DNA of 63,218 bases, filler included, from Octopus bimaculoides (taxonomy: Eukaryota), in NCBI RefSeq assembly GCF_001194135.2. It is 6 parts of 6 records of this genome, joined end to end, with 100 filler letters (N's around TTAATTAATTAA, not from the genome) between each part and the next. Parts side by side here need not be neighbours in the genome. Positions count along the whole stretch, not along the records: positions 1 to 20,180 come from NC_068989.1; 5 more parts are not named here. One strand, written 5' to 3'. A program made the translations under genes and the position numbers. Below are positions 9,306 to 18,300 of this stretch, in pieces; the first letter of the stretch is position 1; each line of letters opens with the position of its first letter. The notes under the pieces are model-generated. The model saw nothing but the letters and a program-made list of their open reading frames with translations. It searched no databases and was not told the origin of the DNA.

Positions 9306-10579
9306 GCTGTTATTTATTTTAGACTTCACCGCAGACACTGCTTGTAATTGGCAATACAAAGATACGCCTCTCTTTGCATTTGGAATCCACTCTCATACCA
9401 TGGGTAAGTTTAAAGAATTTTGAAACATCAAATGTATAAATATCGATACATATATTCAACGTTAGCACTCTAGTATGAAGTACACTTGTATCTTCTTTTT
9501 TAATCTATCGACTCGGGGATATATATATATGTATATACCAGTGGCGACTCCGGTACTCAGGTTGTTCGGGCTTAGCCTGAGTATAAATTTAGTGAAGTGA
9601 ACGTGTATTTTCAAGCTGATTTAATTTCTGCCAACACTGACTTCAAGTATTTAATTGCAGCCAATAACTCGGGCTCCTTTGATTGAGCCTAGTCGCAGTT
9701 TATTTATTTTTGTTCAGCGTCTGGCAGTCGTCAAACAATATCATTCGTCGTAGACGTTCTCTCGACATCATCCACACGCATCTAACTCGGGTTCAGAAGA
9801 TTACAGCCAGAGTTGTTATCTATAATCCAATTCATGTTTACTATACTCTAGTGGAGTCGCAATGGCCCAGTGGTTAGGGCAGCGGACTCGTGGTCATAGG
9901 ATCGCGGTTTTGATTCTCAGACCGTGCGTTGTGAGTGTTTATTGAGCGAAAACACCTGAAGCTCCACGAGGCTCCGGCAGGGGATGGTGGCGAACCCTGC
10001 TGTACTCTTCCACCACAACTTTCTCTCAATCTTTCTTCCTGTTTCTGTTGTGCCTGTAATTCAAAGGGTCAGCCTTGTCACACTGTGTCACGCTGAATCT
10101 CCCCCGAGAACTACGTTAAGGGTACACGTGTCTGTGGAGTGTTCAGCCACTTGCACGTTAATTTCACGAGCAGGCTGTCCTGTTGATTGGATCAACTGGA
10201 ACCCTCGAAAAAGAATGAATATCCCAAATCCTAATTTCTTCTAACAATTGATAATCTTTATTGATATTCGTTTTTGTTTTGCTTACTATGTTTCTCGCAG
10301 CAACAGCGATAACGGGCTACATATATTCTAATTACTCCTACACTGAGATTGTACGAGCTGACCCAAGATATCCAGAGGTATGTAGATTATCGTCATCATC
10401 ATTATCATCATCATCATCATCACCACCATCATTATCATCATCATCATCATTATTATATGCATAATCAATACATTAATCAATGTCTATTTTACTCATTTTT
10501 AGCCAATAGTCAACATCGAAGGCCGTAATATCGTCTTGAAAAATAAAGATCTCCTCGTATGTATTTTAACATCTAATAA

Positions 10580-10620
<41 letters not shown>

Positions 10621-12138: not shown

Positions 12139-15100
12139 TGAACAGAAGAAGAATTGGATGAATTTTTTAAGATTTACGCTGAATTATTTTTCAGATGATG
12201 CGCTGCACACTCACCAACCCAACTGATCAAAAAGCCAATTTCGGGTATGTATTTGTTACTTATGTTAATGTTTGATTATCGTTTTTTTTTTTACTGTTTA
12301 ATTACTCAGTGTAAATACAGCAGGTCTGATGGTCTTGGTATTTACACATTCTAATGTGAGAGCATCGGTAAAATAGTTGTGTAAATGTTTTGGTGGTTGA
12401 CGGATGTCACTTTTTGAATGGGGAAATTATCAAAATAGATGCAAACCAAGCCAAGTCCTTTATAGCACATACTTCAATTCTGAATTGATACGTAGAGTAC
12501 ATGGAGTCATATTCATGTTTAACGAATATGTATTAGTTACATGTTGTTAACTACAAGGATTTTAGTAGGGTTCATAAACAACGAACAGCTAAGTTTCGTT
12601 TTTCATGTAAGAAACATCAGGAATCGTTACCTAGAGCTAAGTTTGCTTTCCTTTTATTTTTTTATTTATATTTACAGGGTATCCACAAAGTCTGGGTACA
12701 TTGAGTAAATAAAATCATAACATAAACAATTAAATATACGAAATAATAATTTCTTAAAGTATGTGTTAATCCCCATGTACCCAGACTTTGTGGACACCCT
12801 GTATAAAATAAATACCGGCCAAGTATCGACTTAAAATGTGGGAGAACACATTGCATAATGGAATCCCAGATATAAGATTGAAAATAAAAGGCAGAGTGGT
12901 CATGACTAGAATGTCTTTAATCTTTAATCATAGGTCTCGTAGATTAGATATGAACAAACTAATAGACAGCAGCAACAATATAGCAACCTATCTCAAGCTA
13001 ACGGAGAAGCTTCTATGTGGGTTGACAGAAATAACAGTTAACTCTACCTCAAATCACAACCTACAGACATGAAAAAAGGAGGACATACTGGATAGTGTAG
13101 TCGTCGATACACTATGTCAGGAAAAATATTGGTTGGTCACGACTGGAATTTCTTTAATCATAGCTCTTCATGAATGGAGCCGACGTATGGATAAACAGCA
13201 ACAATCAAATCCTGTCTTTGAGTAGACTTGAGTGATTTTCAAGTTGGTTTCATGCTTCACTAAGTTTTATATTTTCATTTCATGCTTTCGTGATATATAT
13301 GATATATATTTTTTTCCCGGTATTCAATGTTTTTCCTTGGAATATCCTTGTACATTTTTAATAGAATTAAGATCGTGTAATTTCGATAAAGCGAAATTTC
13401 AATGATTTTTGTATCAAAATATTTCATTACTTGATTTGGAATATAGCTGAAGCATTATCTTGTTGAAAGTCTGACGTGTTTTTATCTTTATCAAACACAG
13501 CTAGTTTTCCTTCATTTTATCGCAGATTCTAATGTAGCATTTTTATTTGTTCCATAATGGTCAAAGTAGAACTTAGTATTTATCTCATTGTTGTGTGTTT
13601 TTTCATACATGGATTCATCCCCAGAGAAAGTTTTACCTTCACTATTACTATTTTTCGACTGGTTTTGATTTTTGTCAGTTCAGGTCACAATTATTCAGCT
13701 ATAAATTTTTCTCAAAATCAGTATCTTTATCAGTTTTATTTTGTTTTTCTTTCGTTTATGTAATGGAGTGATACAGATTTTAAAGTTTTCTACAGCTTTT
13801 TTTCTTGCTATTTTTTATTTCCGTATCTGTTGTAAAAGTTTCTTTAACATCATGTTTTTTCTAGATTTTGTTTTGAATCAGATTATAGTTGAATTTTTTT
13901 TAAATTAACATTAAACACGTTTACTGAATTAGAATATTTTTTCATCCGGCGTCCTTCAATTTTCAATGAATTTATTCTGAAATACTTTCATTAGTTTTTG
14001 TAAATGTCTTCTGATTTTAGGCTTCTCTTTGATCTCATTAAAATGTTTTCCACGATGTTTTCCACGATAAATTGTAGCAAGGAAGTTTGAAATAGTTTTC
14101 TAATGTAATGACCATTTTTTTAATCAGAGCAAAGAGCAGCAGATTCGTCTTCTTTGGTCGAGTGTTTTAGTTCCCAAGTTAATTCTTTTGCTGCATGATG
14201 TCGATGGTCGGTTCAGTTATTTGATTTTACCTGTTGAAAAGCATCCATGAATTAGAGATCAATTCTATTGATTTGTTGATGAAATCGATGGGATCCTACA
14301 TCTAACACAATTAGCTATATTCGAACTACAGAACTATTATGGCTTTAAAATCATCGTTTCACTGTCAATGGAGATATATATTTGATTCAATCTAATTAAT
14401 TAGATGGTAAGAAATACAAACAGCTAGAAACTGAAAATGTGTTCAAGTGATAAATTATATTTTCATTAAATCCCCAATTATACGCTAGGGTCTTCTACTC
14501 TTGGGTTTTCTCCCTTTAATTTTTATTTATTTATTTATTTATTTATTTTTTAGTTTGTCGACGATATTTGTTTTGCATTCTATTGCTGAATATCCAAATA
14601 TTAAAATTATTGCAAATTAGTGTTTTTTGGTTGTTGCGTGTGTTGTTGGCACTCCGTCGCTTACGACGACGAGGGTTCCAGTTGATCCGATCAACGGAAC
14701 AGCCTGCTCATGAAATTAACGTGCAAGTGGCTGAGCACTCCACAGACACGTGTACCCTTAACGTAGTTCTCGGGGATATTCAGCGTGACACAGTGTGACA
14801 AGGGTGGCCCTTTGAAATACAGGTACAACAGAAAGAAGTAGTAAGAGTGAGAGAAAGTTGTGGTGAAAGAGTACGGCAGGGTTCGCCGCAATCCCCTGCC
14901 GGAGCCTCGTGGAGCTTCAGGTGTTTTCACTCAATAAACACTCACAACGCCCGGTCTAGGAATCGAAACCGCGAACCTATGACCGCGAGTCCGCTGCCCT
15001 AATCACTGGGCCATTGCGCCTCCACTGGTTGTTGCATGTAAACCATTGTTAAACTTCACTTCCCTTTGTGCACTCAGCATAGCCTGTACCTTTCAGTCCC

Positions 15101-15387
15101 TGGAAGGGAACGCTATCAGAAGAGATACATTTCTCATCATTTACTTTGTACCCTTTTTTTATATTTTTAGATACGAGCACACAGATCAAATGTGTAACTT
15201 AAACTTGTGGTTTGGAATACCAAAAGAATATGAAAATATATATAAACCGATTGTGTGTGGCAGAAATGCACAAAAGTTTAGTTTGGACGACTACGGCTAC
15301 ATCTTACCCAAAAATTCTAACAAGCCAGACATAGAAGGTTACAAGAAACTGATGTCGCAATTCAATTTGACAATGACGTCATATTAA
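1001..15387 (+). CDS. PHM-like: Divergent monofunctional PHM-like copper type II ascorbate-dependent monooxygenase; join(1001..1052,2502..2589,3447..3541,4038..4109,4650..4707,5545..5609,9323..9403,10301..10377,10503..10556,12195..12244,15171..15387); 5' end probably incomplete
   Basis: All 10 introns are GT..AG with matching phases. The total is 909 nt = 302 aa + TAA. Translation: [302 protein letters not shown]. It is collinear with PHM motifs (DFKP..TVHHM, YAWARNAPPTRLPKGVGF, VLQVH, FAYRVHTH, SGY, NPQLPQ, ARC, DEMCNL). There is no PAL domain and no TM helix. Confidence 0.92.
1116..1192. repeat. (GATA)n microsatellite; others at 2934-3001, 37295-37325, 58625-58658
   Basis: Direct tandem repeat. 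Confidence 0.95.
1985..2137. repeat. Compound (ATT)n/(ACT)n/(ATC)n microsatellite (LINE tail/target); related tracts at 2436-2498, 8335-8368, 9243-9301
   Basis: Direct tandem repeat. Confidence 0.95.
2138..2435 (-). mobile_element. 5'-truncated 3' end of Dong/R4-like RLE non-LTR retrotransposon
   Basis: Minus-strand ORF ends ...[10 protein letters not shown]...[21 protein letters not shown], then a short 3' UTR running into (TAA)n. Both ends abut ATT-type repeats. Approximate bounds. Confidence 0.8.
2502..2589 (+). CDS. PHM-like exon B ([30 protein letters not shown]; CuH motif region)
   Basis: ttatacag| ... |gtaagt; phase 1 to 2. Matches IDFKPRASMDTVHHMLLFGC...YW. Confidence 0.9.
3447..3541 (+). 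CDS. PHM-like exon C ([32 protein letters not shown])
   Basis: tgtttgcag| ... |gtatgc; phase 2 to 1. Matches WFCDEGTC..ILYAWARNAPPTRLPK. Confidence 0.92.
4038..4109 (+). CDS. PHM-like exon D ([24 protein letters not shown]; Q170/H172 equivalents)
   Basis: tttttgctttttcag| ... |gtaagt; phase 1 to 1. Matches GVGFRV...YFVLQVHY. Confidence 0.92.
4650..4707 (+). CDS. PHM-like exon E ([20 protein letters not shown])
   Basis: atcttatag| ... |gtaagt; phase 1 to 2. Matches KDCSGVSVHLTRVP. The alternative acceptor at 4671 runs into a stop. Confidence 0.85.
5545..5609 (+). CDS. PHM-like exon F ([22 protein letters not shown]; interdomain linker)
   Basis: ttttattattgcag| ... |gtaaga; phase 2 to 1. Matches QPLIAGMYLMMSVDTVIPPGEK. 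Confidence 0.88.
6831..7340. repeat. Head-to-head inverted pair of SINE family A 3' halves forming a ~510-bp palindrome
   Basis: 6831-~7087 is the reverse complement of ~7090-7340 with scattered mismatches, a small indel and essentially no spacer. Confidence 0.9.
7809..8333 (-). mobile_element. Internal reverse-transcriptase fragment of Dong/R4-like LINE (frameshifted)
   Basis: [58 protein letters not shown] motifs. Confidence 0.88.
8365..9242 (-). mobile_element. 5'-truncated 3' end of a second Dong/R4-like LINE with RLE endonuclease
   Basis: [45 protein letters not shown] [gap] ..[20 protein letters not shown], 3' UTR, (TAA)n tail. C-terminus and UTR differ from the 2138 copy. Confidence 0.9.
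9323..9403 (+). CDS. PHM-like exon G ([27 protein letters not shown]; CuM H242/H244)
   Basis: ttatttattttag| ... |gtaagt; phase 1 to 1. Matches NADISCQYKMYPMHVFAYRVHTHHLG. Confidence 0.93.
9851..10208 (+). mobile_element. tRNA-derived SINE, family A (near full length, 3' clipped)
   Basis: A-box-like TGGCCCAGTGG and B-box-like segment. Body is shared with copies at 6831-7340, 14641-15026 and 35495-35820. Confidence 0.85.
10301..10377 (+). CDS. PHM-like exon H ([26 protein letters not shown])
   Basis: tgtttctcgcag| ... |gtatgt; phase 1 to 0. Matches GKVVSGYRVRNGQWTLIGRQNPQLPQ. Confidence 0.92.
10503..10556 (+). CDS. PHM-like exon I ([18 protein letters not shown])
   Basis: tctattttactcatttttag| ... 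|gtatgt; 54 nt, phase 0 to 0. Fills the span corresponding to AFYPVEHPVDVTFGDIL. Confidence 0.85.
12049..12135. repeat. (AGT)n microsatellite; others at 24885-24910, 50138-50181
   Basis: Direct tandem repeat. Confidence 0.95.
12195..12244 (+). CDS. PHM-like exon J ([17 protein letters not shown]; C293)
   Basis: ttatttttcag| ... |gtatgt; phase 0 to 2. Matches AARCVFTGEGRTEATHIG. Confidence 0.9.
12673..12803. mobile_element. Tc1/mariner-type MITE with 29-bp TIRs and TA target duplication
   Basis: tacagggtatccacaaagtctgggtacat ... atgtacccagactttgtggacaccctgta (1 mismatch, including TA). Confidence 0.88.
14641..15026 (-). mobile_element. tRNA-derived SINE, family A (full length)
   Basis: Reverse complement of the 9851 copy, with (CAA)n-type tail and B box GGTTTCGATTCC. 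Confidence 0.88.
15171..15387 (+). CDS. PHM-like terminal exon K ([15 protein letters not shown]...IVCG...TSY*; CuM M314)
   Basis: cccttttttatatttttag|; phase 2. DQMCNL corresponds to DEMCNL. Same frame as ORF 15046..15387; stop TAA at 15385-15387. Confidence 0.92.
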
Positions 15388-18300
15388 CAAGATTGAACAA
15401 AGTGACTTTGAATCTCAAGAAAGGTTCCCTTACGACAATGGATCAACTTAAATGATGCTATCCCGTTTCTATTTTGTCTCACTCATTTTTTTTTTCTTTG
15501 CTCCTCTCAGATTTTTCTCTCATCTTTTTTCTTCACTCTATCACTCTCTCAATCGATCTTTCTATATTTCTATTTCTCTCTGCTTTTCTTTATCTCACAT
15601 TCCTACATTTACTGCAGTTAAGCTACCTCTCACGTGGACAATCGCTCTTCGGGCAGGCCTACAATCACAGATGTACCAGTCTTGACCATGTTGTTTTTGT
15701 GTATATCTAAGACTATTTCATCCTATATGGTTTCCATTGTGTTTAAGACGGTAAGGCGTGATTCGAGAGAACTTGGCTGCTATATGTGGCAAGTCAAGCG
15801 AACGCCTACAGGATCCTTGACCATTGGTAATCATATAACCGAGCAATAAGCTCAAACGAAATCACCATAATTTACATTAGACTACTGAAAATTAAACAGA
15901 AAGGGAGCAATACAAAATTAGGAGGATGAATGGAGTTTTTTTACGTTGGAACCTAGATGAATTCCTCTTAACATTGATACGAACTAACATGTTTATATAT
16001 GTATCGCTCAAAGAAGTGATATGCACACGATCTCTAGATTTTCTAGAAGAGGCAGCGAAATCTCTTTCGAATAAACGACCCTAGTGCCTTTGAATATACA
16101 TATACACACCTCAAGGGGATCAACGGTCCTTCACGAACCATAAGCTCATAAGGCCGGTTTCTTGGATTCTATGGTGTATATATTTCATCCCTTCAACTGG
16201 ACACGGTCCACCGCAGAATTTCTCATCTTTGCCAGCTGAGTGGACTGGGGCAACGTGAAACGAAGTGTTTCGCTCAAGAACACAACACATCGCCTGGTCC
16301 AGGAATATATTATTAGAGGAAACATTGGATAATGCGAAAATGAGTTGGTCATAGCTTGAGAGTCTTTAATCATAGATCTCAATCAGAACCACATTGGAGC
16401 TAAGCTACAATAGCAATCTGTTTATGTTCCGACATAAATTTATACCTCTACATATCTACATAAATAATTATCTTCCTACCTATAATTTTCTCTCCCCCTC
16501 AATTTAACTCCATTTCTACCGTTCCTAAATTTTATAACATGCCCACGCATACATGTTTGAGTGATTCTGTAGCCAAGGTTTTTCAAGTATTGTAAAATGT
16601 TTAAAAGTGTGTTATTCTTTTAACATTTTAAAATTCTATAGTTTAATTGTAGAAACTAAAATTGTAATAAAGTTATATTTTTCTTTAATCAGCGTCTTCG
16701 TCTTATCATTATATCCGCGAGACAAGGGTGTCATACATTTAGAGAACAGGTTAGAGACGATTAAATCGATCTCTGTACTTGATTTTTACTTTATTTTATC
16801 AAAACAAAATGTATCTAAATTTAAATCAGCAGGATTCAAAGCTTTTCATACAAAGCCACCCGAGATTACTCTGGTTCTATAATATAAACTTTATAATTTG
16901 AAGTTATCTAAATTAAAACCTTCCATCAAAATTCAAGTTAATTTATGTTCCAGCCACCAGGTTAATAACAGCAAAATTATTTAACTCGATTCTTTGATAT
17001 TTTCAAACAACTGAAACTGTATTTCAACAGAAATATGGCAGCAAAAGTATGGACGTAACTAAATACGCAAACACATTTTGTCAGATGTTCTTCGGTAAAG
17101 ATTTTATCTCCGGCATTTTCATAGAATCGTGCCTTCTAGCAGTGTATATACACTTAATATAATACACAGGTGGTGATTTTAATTTAAAGTTGCTTCAGTT
17201 GCGTATACCGAGTTTTTATACATCCTGACAAGCTTCCGCAATAGGATAGGATAGAGCTCCTTCACGAATCATAGAGACTCACAGTACCGGTTTTCCGGAT
17301 TCTATGACGTATATGTTCTCCACTTCCTCCTCCTGGACGGGACGCCGGCCCGTCACAGGAATACTCATTTTTGCCAGCTGAGTGGACTAGAGCAAAGTGA
17401 AATGAAATATTTTTTACTCGAGAATACAATGCATCGCTCGGTTCAGGAATCGAAACCACAATCTTACGATCATGAGTTCAACACCTTGACCACGAAGCCA
17501 CGCGTCTCCACAAGCTTCTACAATACCAGTGAATGTTTTATTCACTTTTTCTTATCTATTGAAGCACAAATTTCGTTTTGGAAGGGGACAATCGAGTACA
17601 CGGCATTGAAAAACCTCAACAAAGGTGAGGGCAGCATCCCAAACGAATGAAAAGATNNNNNNNNNNNNNNNNNNNNNNNNNNNNNNNNNNNNNNNNNNNN
17701 NNNNNNNNNNNNNNNNNNNNNNNNNNNNNNNNNNNNNNNNNNNNNNNNNNNNNNNNNNNNNNNNNNNNNNNNNNNNNNNNNNNNNNNNNNNNNNNNNNNN
17801 NNNNNNNNNNNNNNNNNNNNNNNNNNNNNNNNNNNNNNNNNNNNNNNNNNNNNNNNNNNNNNNNNNNNNNNNNNNNNNNNNNNNNNNNNNNNNNNNNNNN
17901 NNNNNNNNNNNNNNNNNNNNNNNNNNNNNNNNNNNNNNNNNNNNNNNNNNNNNNNNNNNNNNNNNNNNNNNNNNNNNNNNNNNNNNNNNNNNNNNNNNNN
18001 NNNNNNNNNNNNNNNNNNNNNNNNNNNNNNNNNNNNNNNNNNNNNNNNNNNNNNNNNNNNNNNNNNNNNNNNNNNNNNNNNNNNNNNNNNNNNNNNNNNN
18101 NNNNNNNNNNNNNNNNNNNNNNNNNNNNNNNNNNNNNNNNNNNNNNNNNNNNNNNNNNNNNNNNNNNNNNNNNNNNNNNNNNNNNNNNNNNNNNNNNNNN
18201 NNNNNNNNNNNNNNNNNNNNNNNNNNNNNNNNNNNNNNNNNNNNNNNNNNNNNNNNNNNNNNNNNNNNNNNNNNNNNNNNNNNNNNNNNNNNNNNNNNNN

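What the first reader, a model, noticed from the sequence alone, without database searches (positions are those of the whole stretch)
9379..15204. Substrate pocket remodelled: R240G, E313Q, Y318N with CuM intact
FAFGIHSH replaces FAYRVHTH (GGA at 9382-9384). DQMCNLN replaces DEMCNLY (CAA 15187-15189, AAC 15202-15204), while N316 is kept. Losing the carboxylate clamp predicts that C-terminal Gly peptides are not bound. A neutral or bulkier substrate at an O2-competent CuM site is plausible (inference).
Basis: partly seen in the sequence, partly recalled or inferred. Interest (0 to 1): 0.7.

Follow-up and report, generated by a model that had tools for sequence, protein, structure and literature searches.

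The report
Octopus PHM-like copper protein, clamp lost
The window holds an intact, spliced octopus gene for a secreted relative of the peptide-amidating enzyme PHM that has lost the residues gripping the peptide's C-terminal glycine and one histidine of its second copper site, so it is very probably not an amidating enzyme; it belongs to a fast-evolving, uncharacterised mollusc subfamily.

Summary
GGA 9382-9384 (Gly for rat PHM R240), CAA 15187-15189 (Gln for E313) and AAC 15202-15204 (Asn for Y318) lie in two exons of one + strand gene. H242, H244, M314 and N316 are kept. I rebuilt the gene as 11 exons, 1001-15387, all GT-AG. Exon lengths equal exons 2-12 of the Octopus sinensis RefSeq orthologue (86% identical). 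Exon 1 lies off the left edge. Every N gap is intronic, and no coding residue is missing.

H107 is Arg (CGT 2537-2539), and rat H107A keeps at most about 5% activity.

These changes are not private to this gene. R240 is G, A or S throughout a mollusc-wide PHM-like clade (chiton, scallop, ark clam, three cephalopod lineages). About 110 canonical PHM domains show no exception at R240, E313 or Y318. The clade keeps H108, Q170, H172, H242, H244, M314 and eight cysteines, and has its own signature residues.

dN/dS against O. sinensis is 0.7-0.9, yet there are no stops, indels or lost splice sites.

Verdict: a secreted copper protein that no longer binds peptidyl-Gly. A new substrate is somewhat more likely than a non-catalytic role. 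It is a new variant of a known kind, of moderate interest.

The parts
1001..1052 (+). Exon 2 (numbering of the O. sinensis orthologue): [17 protein letters not shown]. Exon 1 (signal peptide plus first strand) is not in the window.
   Evidence: Acceptor cag|ACGCAT and donor gtaagt. The length, 52 nt, equals the O. sinensis exon. Homology to the O. sinensis locus starts only at window 638, about 760 nt short of its exon 1.
2502..2589 (+). Exon 3. It carries the CuH 'HH' motif changed to RH: CGT 2537-2539 is Arg at H107 and CAT 2540-2542 is H108.
   Evidence: HMMER aligns [11 protein letters not shown] with dtvHHmllfgc of rat PHM.
3447..3541 (+). Exon 4: [31 protein letters not shown].
   Evidence: 95 nt in both species.
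4038..4109 (+). Exon 5. Q170 (CAA 4082-4084) and H172 (CAC 4088-4090) are kept, in VVQIHAP.
4650..4707 (+). Exon 6: [18 protein letters not shown].
   Evidence: 58 nt in both species.
5545..5609 (+). Exon 7: [21 protein letters not shown]. This is the interdomain linker region.
   Evidence: 65 nt in both species.
9323..9403 (+). Exon 8: FAFGIHSH. Gly (GGA 9382-9384) stands at R240. H242 (9388-9390) and H244 (9394-9396) are kept.
10301..10377 (+). Exon 9: [25 protein letters not shown].
   Evidence: 77 nt in both species.
10503..10556 (+). Exon 10: [18 protein letters not shown].
   Evidence: 54 nt in both species. The exon is missing from the O. vulgaris annotation but present in the O. sinensis RefSeq model.
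10557..12194 (+). Intron holding both assembly gaps of the finding: 10629-10638 inside a (TC)n run, and 11507-11955.
   Evidence: The flanking exons are adjacent in the orthologue, so no residues are missing.
12195..12244 (+). Exon 11: [16 protein letters not shown](G). It holds C293.
   Evidence: 50 nt in both species.
15171..15387 (+). Exon 12, the last: [11 protein letters not shown]... up to the stop TAA 15385-15387. Q at E313 (15187-15189), M314 (15190-15192), N316 (15196-15198), N at Y318 (15202-15204). No PAL domain follows.

Best explanation
The window carries exons 2-12 of a functional octopus gene. It encodes a small (about 334 aa), secreted, stand-alone PHM-like two-domain copper protein.

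The gene belongs to a divergent mollusc-wide subfamily that split from the peptide-amidating PHMs and gave up the peptidyl-glycine carboxylate clamp (R240 became G, A or S). The cephalopod branch also replaced CuH ligand H107 with Arg (Asn in one copy). This orthologue group further changed E313 to Q and Y318 to N.

It therefore very probably does not hydroxylate C-terminal glycine.

The whole clade conserves H108, Q170, H172, H242, H244, M314 and four disulfides, and has its own signature residues. My best reading (inference) is that it still binds copper at CuM and, more weakly, at a two-His CuH. On that reading it performs ascorbate/O2-dependent oxidation of some other extracellular or secretory-pathway substrate, probably slowly. 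The sequence evolves fast, as many secreted lineage-specific proteins do.
For: Gene intactness:
- 11 exons, all GT-AG, open frame to TAA.
- Exon lengths are identical to O. sinensis exons 2-12.
- There are 0 indels in 909 coding nt, against about 10 indel events per kb in the flanking introns. There is no premature stop (P = 0.12 under 63 random substitutions). All 20 splice sites are kept.

Family and fold:
- Rat PHM, E 1.8e-22.
- Pfam Cu2_monoox_C, E 5.4e-13.
- AlphaFold model of the orthologue has pLDDT 89.3. Its best PDB matches are rat PHM (TM 0.71-0.83), with DBH second at 0.58-0.60.

Clamp and CuH loss:
- Residue tables and alignment.
- Canonical PHMs are invariant at these sites.
- R240 is the salt-bridge partner of the substrate carboxylate; H107A keeps at most about 5% activity (PMC12164859, PMC6123673).

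Subfamily:
- It forms one clade in the NJ tree, with chiton, scallop, ark-clam and octopus members.
- Only 25 columns are invariant among 11 sequences, and they include all five remaining Cu ligands, Q170 and eight Cys.
- Clade-specific conserved residues are W148, W229, Y270, N297, F306, D267 and S110.

Expression of a sister paralogue: complete intronless 1.3-1.4 kb contigs from two sequencing runs.

The scallop has both a canonical PHM and a divergent one.
Against: - dN/dS against O. sinensis is 0.69-0.89. The 42 amino-acid differences do not differ from the neutral expectation of 44.7 +/- 3.3. Constraint on the sequence as a whole is therefore weak.
- Rat H107A is nearly dead, so catalysis may be lost.
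- The former substrate-contact positions (240, 313, 316, 318) vary among clade members. That fits loss of function at the pocket as well as a new specificity.
- No expression data exist for this gene itself.
- Exon 1 is not in the window.
- No substrate is known.
- I could not inspect model coordinates to see whether another basic residue (such as R at 107, or R at rat position 269) reaches the pocket.
Confidence: 0.5

Rival explanations
1. It is a pseudoenzyme. The protein is made and secreted and keeps the PHM fold, and perhaps copper, but it has no turnover. It would serve as a binding, carrier or structural protein, for example a copper or ligand binder.
For: - H107 is replaced by Arg. Single CuH His-to-Ala mutants of rat PHM are inactive or keep at most 5% activity (PMC6123673, PMC12164859).
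- All three carboxylate-contact features are weakened.
- The substitution pattern is near-neutral.
- Pocket positions vary across the clade.
Against: The five remaining copper ligands and Q170 of the proposed electron path are invariant across clade members that are only 26-50% identical, although evolution is fast. A mere scaffold would not be expected to keep both copper sites. Members with an intact HH motif (chiton, scallop) show that the clade began as a likely enzyme.
Confidence: 0.3
2. The gene is drifting towards a pseudogene in this lineage. The open frame is simply not yet broken.
For: - dN/dS is 0.7-0.9.
- Differences are spread almost evenly over codon positions: 26, 15 and 22.
- Exon 1 is not found in the window.
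- Pfam's N-domain model does not reach E <= 1.
Against: - There is no indel in 909 nt, where about 9 would be expected from the intron indel density (P about 1e-4).
- There is no stop, and all splice sites are conserved.
- The same residues and exon structure occur in O. sinensis and O. vulgaris.
- The paralogue families are equally fast (78.5% identity between O. bimaculoides and O. vulgaris), yet are old and transcribed.
- Exon 1 is expected to lie beyond the piece's edge by synteny.
Confidence: 0.1
3. It is still a peptidylglycine alpha-hydroxylating enzyme. It would bind the C-terminal carboxylate through a relocated basic residue, for example Arg at the H107 position across the cleft, or Arg at rat position 269.
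For: N316 and the whole CuM site are kept. Arg or Lys occupies the H107 position in several members. I could not find a canonical cephalopod PHM among the named hits, so its existence in octopus is inferred rather than shown here.
Against: - R240, E313 and Y318 are without exception in about 110 canonical domains from cnidarians to vertebrates.
- The position-107 residue is Asn in one octopus paralogue and His in chiton and scallop members that also lack R240, so it is not a consistent replacement.
- Losing a CuH ligand to make a clamp would cripple electron transfer.
- The scallop carries a canonical PHM alongside its divergent copy.
Confidence: 0.07

Closest known systems
[quoted passage not shown]
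   Same: - Two-domain beta-sandwich fold (TM 0.71-0.83 for the orthologue model).
- CuM triad H242/H244/M314.
- H108, Q170, H172 and N316.
- Four of the five disulfides.
- Signal peptide in the orthologue.
- No DOMON domain.
   Different: - H107 is Arg and M109 is Ile.
- R240 is Gly, E313 is Gln and Y318 is Asn.
- About 23-28% identity.
- Pfam's N-domain model is barely detectable.
- 12 or more subfamily-specific conserved residues.
- Near-neutral evolutionary rate.
Automated annotations of the orthologues: 'peptidylglycine alpha-hydroxylating monooxygenase-like' [Octopus sinensis] (P0061, 334 aa) and CAI9727953.1 [Octopus vulgaris] (P0001)
   Same: 81-86% identical, with the same exon lengths and the same R/G/Q/N residues at positions 107, 240, 313 and 318.
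   Different: The names imply amidating activity, which the residues argue against. The O. vulgaris model mis-reads two exons. The window's own copy is not in the protein collection.
Divergent mollusc PHM-like proteins: 'probable PHM 1' of Mizuhopecten yessoensis (P0008), Liolophura sinensis XP_064609811 (P0010), Tegillarca granosa KAJ8314224 group (P0007), and octopus 'PAM B-like' paralogues (P0063, P0051)
   Same: - Same clade in the tree.
- All lack R240 (A or S).
- Same signature residues.
- Stand-alone proteins of about 330-355 aa.
   Different: - Chiton and scallop members keep HH at CuH, and most keep E313.
- Only the window gene and its orthologues combine G240, Q313 and N318.
Dopamine beta-hydroxylase / tyramine beta-hydroxylase / MOXD1 (DBH: PDB 4ZEL)
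   Same: Same copper monooxygenase superfamily. These are family members that do not use peptidyl-Gly and lack Arg at the R240 position (from my own knowledge of DBH).
   Different: - They have an N-terminal DOMON domain and a C-terminal dimerisation region.
- They keep all three CuH histidines.
- The structural match is weaker (TM 0.58-0.60).

Membership tests
[quoted passage not shown] | Two beta-sandwich domains homologous to Pfam PF01082 plus PF03712 | tested here: met
   - PF03712, E 5.4e-13.
- Full-length HMMER alignment to rat PHM, E 1.8e-22.
- Orthologue model TM 0.71-0.83 to PHM.
- PF01082 is not reached at E <= 1 for the window protein. It is only 'weak' for the orthologue.
[quoted passage not shown] | CuM ligands H242, H244 and M314 | tested here: met
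   IHSH at 9388-9396 and ATG at 15190-15192.
[quoted passage not shown] | CuH ligands H107, H108 and H172, all three present | tested here: not met
   H107 is Arg (CGT 2537-2539). H108 and H172 are kept. Every canonical domain examined has HH.
PHM sensu stricto (peptidylglycine hydroxylase, EC 1.14.17.3) | R240 salt bridge to the substrate's C-terminal carboxylate | tested here: not met
   Gly (GGA 9382-9384). The role of R240 is taken from PMC12164859.
PHM sensu stricto (peptidylglycine hydroxylase, EC 1.14.17.3) | Secondary substrate contacts Y318 and N316 | tested here: not met
   Y318 is Asn (15202-15204). N316 is kept (15196-15198).
PHM sensu stricto (peptidylglycine hydroxylase, EC 1.14.17.3) | Invariant E313 next to M314 (its role is not known to me) | tested here: not met
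   Gln (CAA 15187-15189). E is invariant in all canonical domains that align there.
PHM sensu stricto (peptidylglycine hydroxylase, EC 1.14.17.3) | Ascorbate- and O2-dependent hydroxylation of glycine-extended peptides | not testable with these tools
   This needs recombinant protein and an enzyme assay.
Bifunctional PAM | PAL (lyase) domain and transmembrane tail after the PHM core | tested here: not met
   The stop codon at 15385-15387 falls about 60 residues after M314. The orthologue is 334 aa with only the two PHM Pfam domains.
DBH / TBH / MOXD1 branch | N-terminal DOMON domain | tested here: not met
   The orthologue starts with a signal peptide and goes straight into the catalytic core. 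There is no DOMON Pfam hit. DBH is the weaker structural match.
Divergent mollusc PHM-like subfamily (defined here) | Small residue at position 240, plus signature residues W148, W229, Y270, N297, F306, D267 and S110 (rat numbering), with the CuM triad, H108 and H172 retained | tested here: met
   The window protein has all of them and nests inside the clade.

The most novel reading that the evidence does not exclude
Molluscs carry an undescribed subfamily of PHM-derived secreted copper monooxygenases with a new, non-peptidyl-Gly substrate. Its cephalopod members are natural two-His CuH variants that still turn over. That would show that the 'essential' H107 can be dispensed with, and would give a natural test case for how electrons reach CuM.
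Probability: 0.3. Interest if true: 0.65.

Novelty: new variant of a known kind. Interest (0 to 1): 0.45.

Why it matters
PHM is the only known enzyme for peptide C-terminal amidation. Its copper ligands and carboxylate clamp are treated as universally conserved.

An old, still-maintained mollusc subfamily lacks the clamp. Its octopus members also lack one CuH histidine. This shows that the scaffold has been reused for something else.

It warns against the current automated names ('PHM-like', 'PAM B-like'), which imply amidation.

If the proteins are active, they offer natural variants for the debated questions of how CuH geometry and substrate binding gate electron transfer and O2 activation. 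If inactive, they are an example of a copper pseudoenzyme kept for hundreds of millions of years.

Tried and rejected
1. A word-indexed protein search with a partial stitched query found nothing. The exhaustive HMMER search was needed.
2. I first considered [10 protein letters not shown] (about 3385-3414, followed by an in-frame TGA) as a broken HH exon, and so a pseudogene. This was rejected. The real HH-equivalent exon is 2502-2589, and the CATCAT stretch is intron.
3. I considered 14130-14177 ([16 protein letters not shown]) as the Cys293 exon. This was rejected on splice phase. The true exons are 10503-10556 and 12195-12244.
4. I first took ATG 938 as the start codon. This was rejected. 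It is intron read-through upstream of the exon 2 acceptor, and the same stretch has a stop in O. sinensis.
The 86%-identical orthologue was modelled instead.
6. tRNA and Rfam scans of the window found nothing.
7. Literature searches found no description of this subfamily. The only lead is a Cu2_monooxygen protein in the Pinctada shell matrix and mantle-biased expression in oyster and scallop (PMC4660305, PMC11464482). Neither is shown to belong to this clade.
8. I could not identify a canonical cephalopod PHM/PAM among the named hits. Its existence is inferred from amidated cephalopod neuropeptides.
Full report
**What the window is**

The piece (1-20180) is AT-rich eukaryotic DNA. It is full of microsatellites, short interspersed repeats, a reverse-transcriptase fragment and eight N gaps. 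The closest relatives of its one recognisable gene are Octopus sinensis and O. vulgaris proteins. Nucleotide identity to the O. sinensis locus is about 85-95% in exons and introns alike. The window therefore comes from another octopod.

**Checking the observation**

- GGA 9382-9384, in TTT GCA TTT GGA ATC CAC TCT CAT (FAFGIHSH).
- CAA 15187-15189 and AAC 15202-15204, in GAT CAA ATG TGT AAC TTA AAC (DQMCNLN).

HMMER against PDB sequences aligns these with FAYRVHTH and DEMCNLY of rat PHM. I checked the numbering through C227, H242 and H244.

**Gene model**

The finding spans several exons and two gaps, so I rebuilt the gene.

An exhaustive HMMER search with five confident exons found an 80%-identical 304-aa protein and about 45 more distant PHM relatives. 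With these as guides, and then the O. sinensis RefSeq protein P0061 and its genomic locus L001, the gene resolves into 11 exons:
- 1001-1052
- 2502-2589
- 3447-3541
- 4038-4109
- 4650-4707
- 5545-5609
- 9323-9403
- 10301-10377
- 10503-10556
- 12195-12244
- 15171-15387

Every intron is GT...AG and the phases fit. The frame is open to TAA 15385-15387. The exon lengths (52, 88, 95, 72, 58, 65, 81, 77, 54, 50, 217 nt) are identical to exons 2-12 of the O. sinensis gene.

Exon 1 of that gene (96 nt: signal peptide plus first strand) lies 1.1 kb upstream of exon 2. In the window, homology to L001 begins only at 638, so exon 1 is beyond the left edge.

All N gaps fall in introns. The two gaps inside the finding's range (10629-10638, within a (TC)n run, and 11507-11955) both lie in the intron between exons 10 and 11. 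Those exons are contiguous in the orthologue. The larger gap corresponds to 341 nt of exon-free intron in O. sinensis. Nothing coding is missing, and the frame is not in doubt.

**What the protein is**

The 302 residues encoded in the window align to rat PHM over 251 positions in one stretch (E 1.8e-22). They hit Pfam Cu2_monoox_C (E 5.4e-13). The N-domain model does not reach E <= 1.

- The model has pLDDT 89.3 and pTM 0.86, with a disordered N-terminal 15 residues consistent with a signal peptide.
- Its best PDB matches are some 30 rat PHM entries (TM 0.71-0.83, E about 1e-21).
- Human DBH is a weaker second (TM about 0.6).

There is no DOMON domain, no PAL domain and no membrane tail.

**Key residues (rat numbering)**

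| Site | State in the window protein |
|---|---|
| CuM ligands H242, H244, M314 | kept |
| N316 | kept |
| R240 | Gly |
| E313 | Gln |
| Y318 | Asn |
| CuH ligand H107 | Arg (CGT 2537-2539) |
| H108, Q170, H172 | kept |
| M109 | Ile |
| Cysteines | eight kept, forming four of the five rat disulfides |

The fifth pair of cysteines (C47-C186) is also absent from nearly all the other homologues tabulated, whether canonical or divergent.

The O. sinensis and O. vulgaris orthologues have the same R, G, Q and N at positions 107, 240, 313 and 318.

**How unusual this is**

Take the canonical PHM domains among the 48 hits and all 64 monofunctional PHMs found with a limpet PHM as query. Every sequence that aligns at these sites has H107, H108, H172, R240, H242, H244, E313, M314 and Y318. 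These come from cnidarians, echinoderms, tunicates, amphioxus, annelids, arthropods, brachiopods, gastropods and bivalves. N316 has a single exception (Val in P0026). Y79 varies between L and Y, so its change here means nothing.

The exceptions form one clade in a neighbour-joining tree. It contains:
- the window gene and its orthologues;
- two further cephalopod lineages (the octopus 'PAM B-like' proteins P0063 and P0051, and the unnamed transcripts P0002 and P0062);
- a chiton protein (P0010);
- a scallop protein (P0008);
- an ark-clam group (P0007);
- two unnamed sequences.

All of them lack R240 (G, A or S). H107 is R in the window gene and its two orthologues, in one octopus 'PAM B-like' copy (P0063) and in the unnamed transcripts. 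It is N in the other 'PAM B-like' copy (P0051), K in the ark clam, and still H in chiton and scallop. Positions 313 (E/Q), 316 (N/D) and 318 (Y/N/S/L/H) vary.

Among 11 aligned sequences that are only 26-50% identical to the window protein, just 25 columns are invariant. They include H108, Q170, H172, H242, H244, M314 and eight Cys. By chance that would be of order (25/323)^6.

The clade also has its own conserved residues that canonical PHMs lack: W148, W229, Y270, N297, F306, D267 and S110.

The scallop has both a canonical PHM (P0104) and the divergent copy (P0008). At least there, the subfamily is an extra paralogue.

**Is the gene alive?**

Against O. sinensis the 909 shared coding nucleotides differ at 63 sites (26, 15 and 22 by codon position) and 42 of 302 residues.
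- dN/dS is 0.69 (NG86) to 0.89 (ML).
- Random placement of 63 substitutions gives 44.7 +/- 3.3 amino-acid changes, so the replacement rate is statistically neutral.

Three observations argue against neutrality of the gene as a whole:
- There is no indel in the CDS, while about 1.9 kb of aligned intron flanks show 19 gap events. About 9 would be expected in 909 nt (P about 1e-4).
- There is no stop (P = 0.12).
- All 20 splice dinucleotides are intact.

The sister paralogue is equally fast (78.5% identity between O. bimaculoides and O. vulgaris). A third cephalopod paralogue occurs as complete, intronless 1.3-1.4 kb contigs in two sequencing runs, that is, as mRNA.

The pattern is that of a maintained, rapidly evolving secreted protein, not of a dead gene. 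Recent decay in this one species cannot be excluded.

**Mechanistic reading**

Shown in the literature:
- R240 makes the salt bridge to the C-terminal carboxylate of peptidyl-Gly, with Y318 and N316 as secondary contacts. An electron path was traced from H108 through Q170 and a water molecule to that carboxylate (PMC12164859).
- H107A, H108A and H172A are each inactive or keep at most about 5% activity. The single mutants still bind two Cu in solution (PMC6123673, PMC12164859).

Inferred:
- Without R240 and Y318, the protein should not bind glycine-extended peptides in the PHM manner.
- With Arg at 107, the CuH site has two His and an altered geometry.
- Both copper sites' remaining ligands are invariant in the clade, so copper binding is probably still selected.

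Whether turnover occurs, and on what substrate, is open. I put 'acts on a different substrate, probably slowly' somewhat ahead of 'non-catalytic' (about 0.5 against 0.3). 'Drifting to pseudogene' is about 0.1, and 'still an amidating enzyme with a relocated clamp' is below 0.1.

The substitutions, the intact CuM and the prediction about peptidyl-Gly stand.

The idea of an O2-competent site awaiting a neutral or bulkier substrate overlooks the damaged CuH site. It also overlooks that the clamp loss is an ancient subfamily trait, with the neighbouring pocket residues drifting.

A spatially relocated basic residue could not be checked without model coordinates.

**Novelty and limits**

Orthologues are already annotated automatically as 'PHM-like'. 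I found no paper describing the subfamily or its residue pattern.

It is a new variant of a known kind and of moderate interest.

Limits:
- no expression data for this gene;
- exon 1 is outside the window;
- no 3D pocket analysis;
- a simple NJ tree;
- a canonical octopus PHM was not retrieved.

Noticed in passing
window 7812-8180 (-) and 8930-9313 (-): A reverse-transcriptase fragment (Pfam RVT_1, E 1.5e-5) and a further retroelement-like open frame lie inside the 3.7-kb intron between exons 7 and 8. They are split by the N gap 8678-8929.
   Followed up: partly
window 6830-7070, 7092-7341, 9850-10208, 14641-15026; also 16144-16306 and 17287-17525: Two families of short interspersed repeats (87-97% alike, in both orientations) are scattered through the introns and downstream. 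The second family also occurs upstream of the O. sinensis gene. Neither has a tRNA or Rfam match.
   Followed up: partly
window 9242-9302, 10389-10450, 12048-12135: Long perfect microsatellites sit right against splice sites. (ATT)20 ends 20 nt before the exon 8 acceptor. (ATC)n fills most of the 125-nt intron 9. (TAG)29 ends 60 nt before exon 11. Their length variation could affect splicing.
   Followed up: no
window 12307-12381; O. vulgaris protein CAI9727953.1 (P0001): The O. vulgaris annotation replaces exons 10-11 (which hold C293) with an intronic read, CKYSRFDGLSIYTFECESIGKMVV. The same stretch in the window contains a stop codon. The O. sinensis RefSeq model has the correct exons.
   Followed up: yes
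window 938-1000: An ATG-initiated frame (MRKRQKFSFCLMLLSVLYLFQ) runs in phase into exon 2 and looks like a signal peptide. In O. sinensis the same stretch is interrupted by a stop, and the real first exon lies 1.1 kb upstream. It is probably intron, though an alternative first exon is not excluded.
   Followed up: partly
window 3385-3446: CATCAT...CATCAT gives '[10 protein letters not shown]' in the same frame as exon 4. This mimics a broken CuH HH motif, but it is a chance feature of the intron's polypyrimidine/acceptor region.
   Followed up: yes
L002 and L003 (Logan contigs of SRR29271483 and SRR8281661): A third cephalopod paralogue (P0062, 337 aa; R at 107, S at 240, Q at 313, D at 316) is present as full-length mRNA-like contigs. 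A 90%-identity cluster member was seen on 30 contigs. The species was not identified.
   Followed up: partly
literature: PMC4660305, PMC11464482: A Cu2_monooxygen-domain protein is listed in the prismatic-layer shell matrix of Pinctada fucata. Cu2_monooxygen genes are mantle-biased in oyster and scallop. This may be a lead to the role of the bivalve members of the divergent clade, but it is not shown to be the same clade.
   Followed up: no
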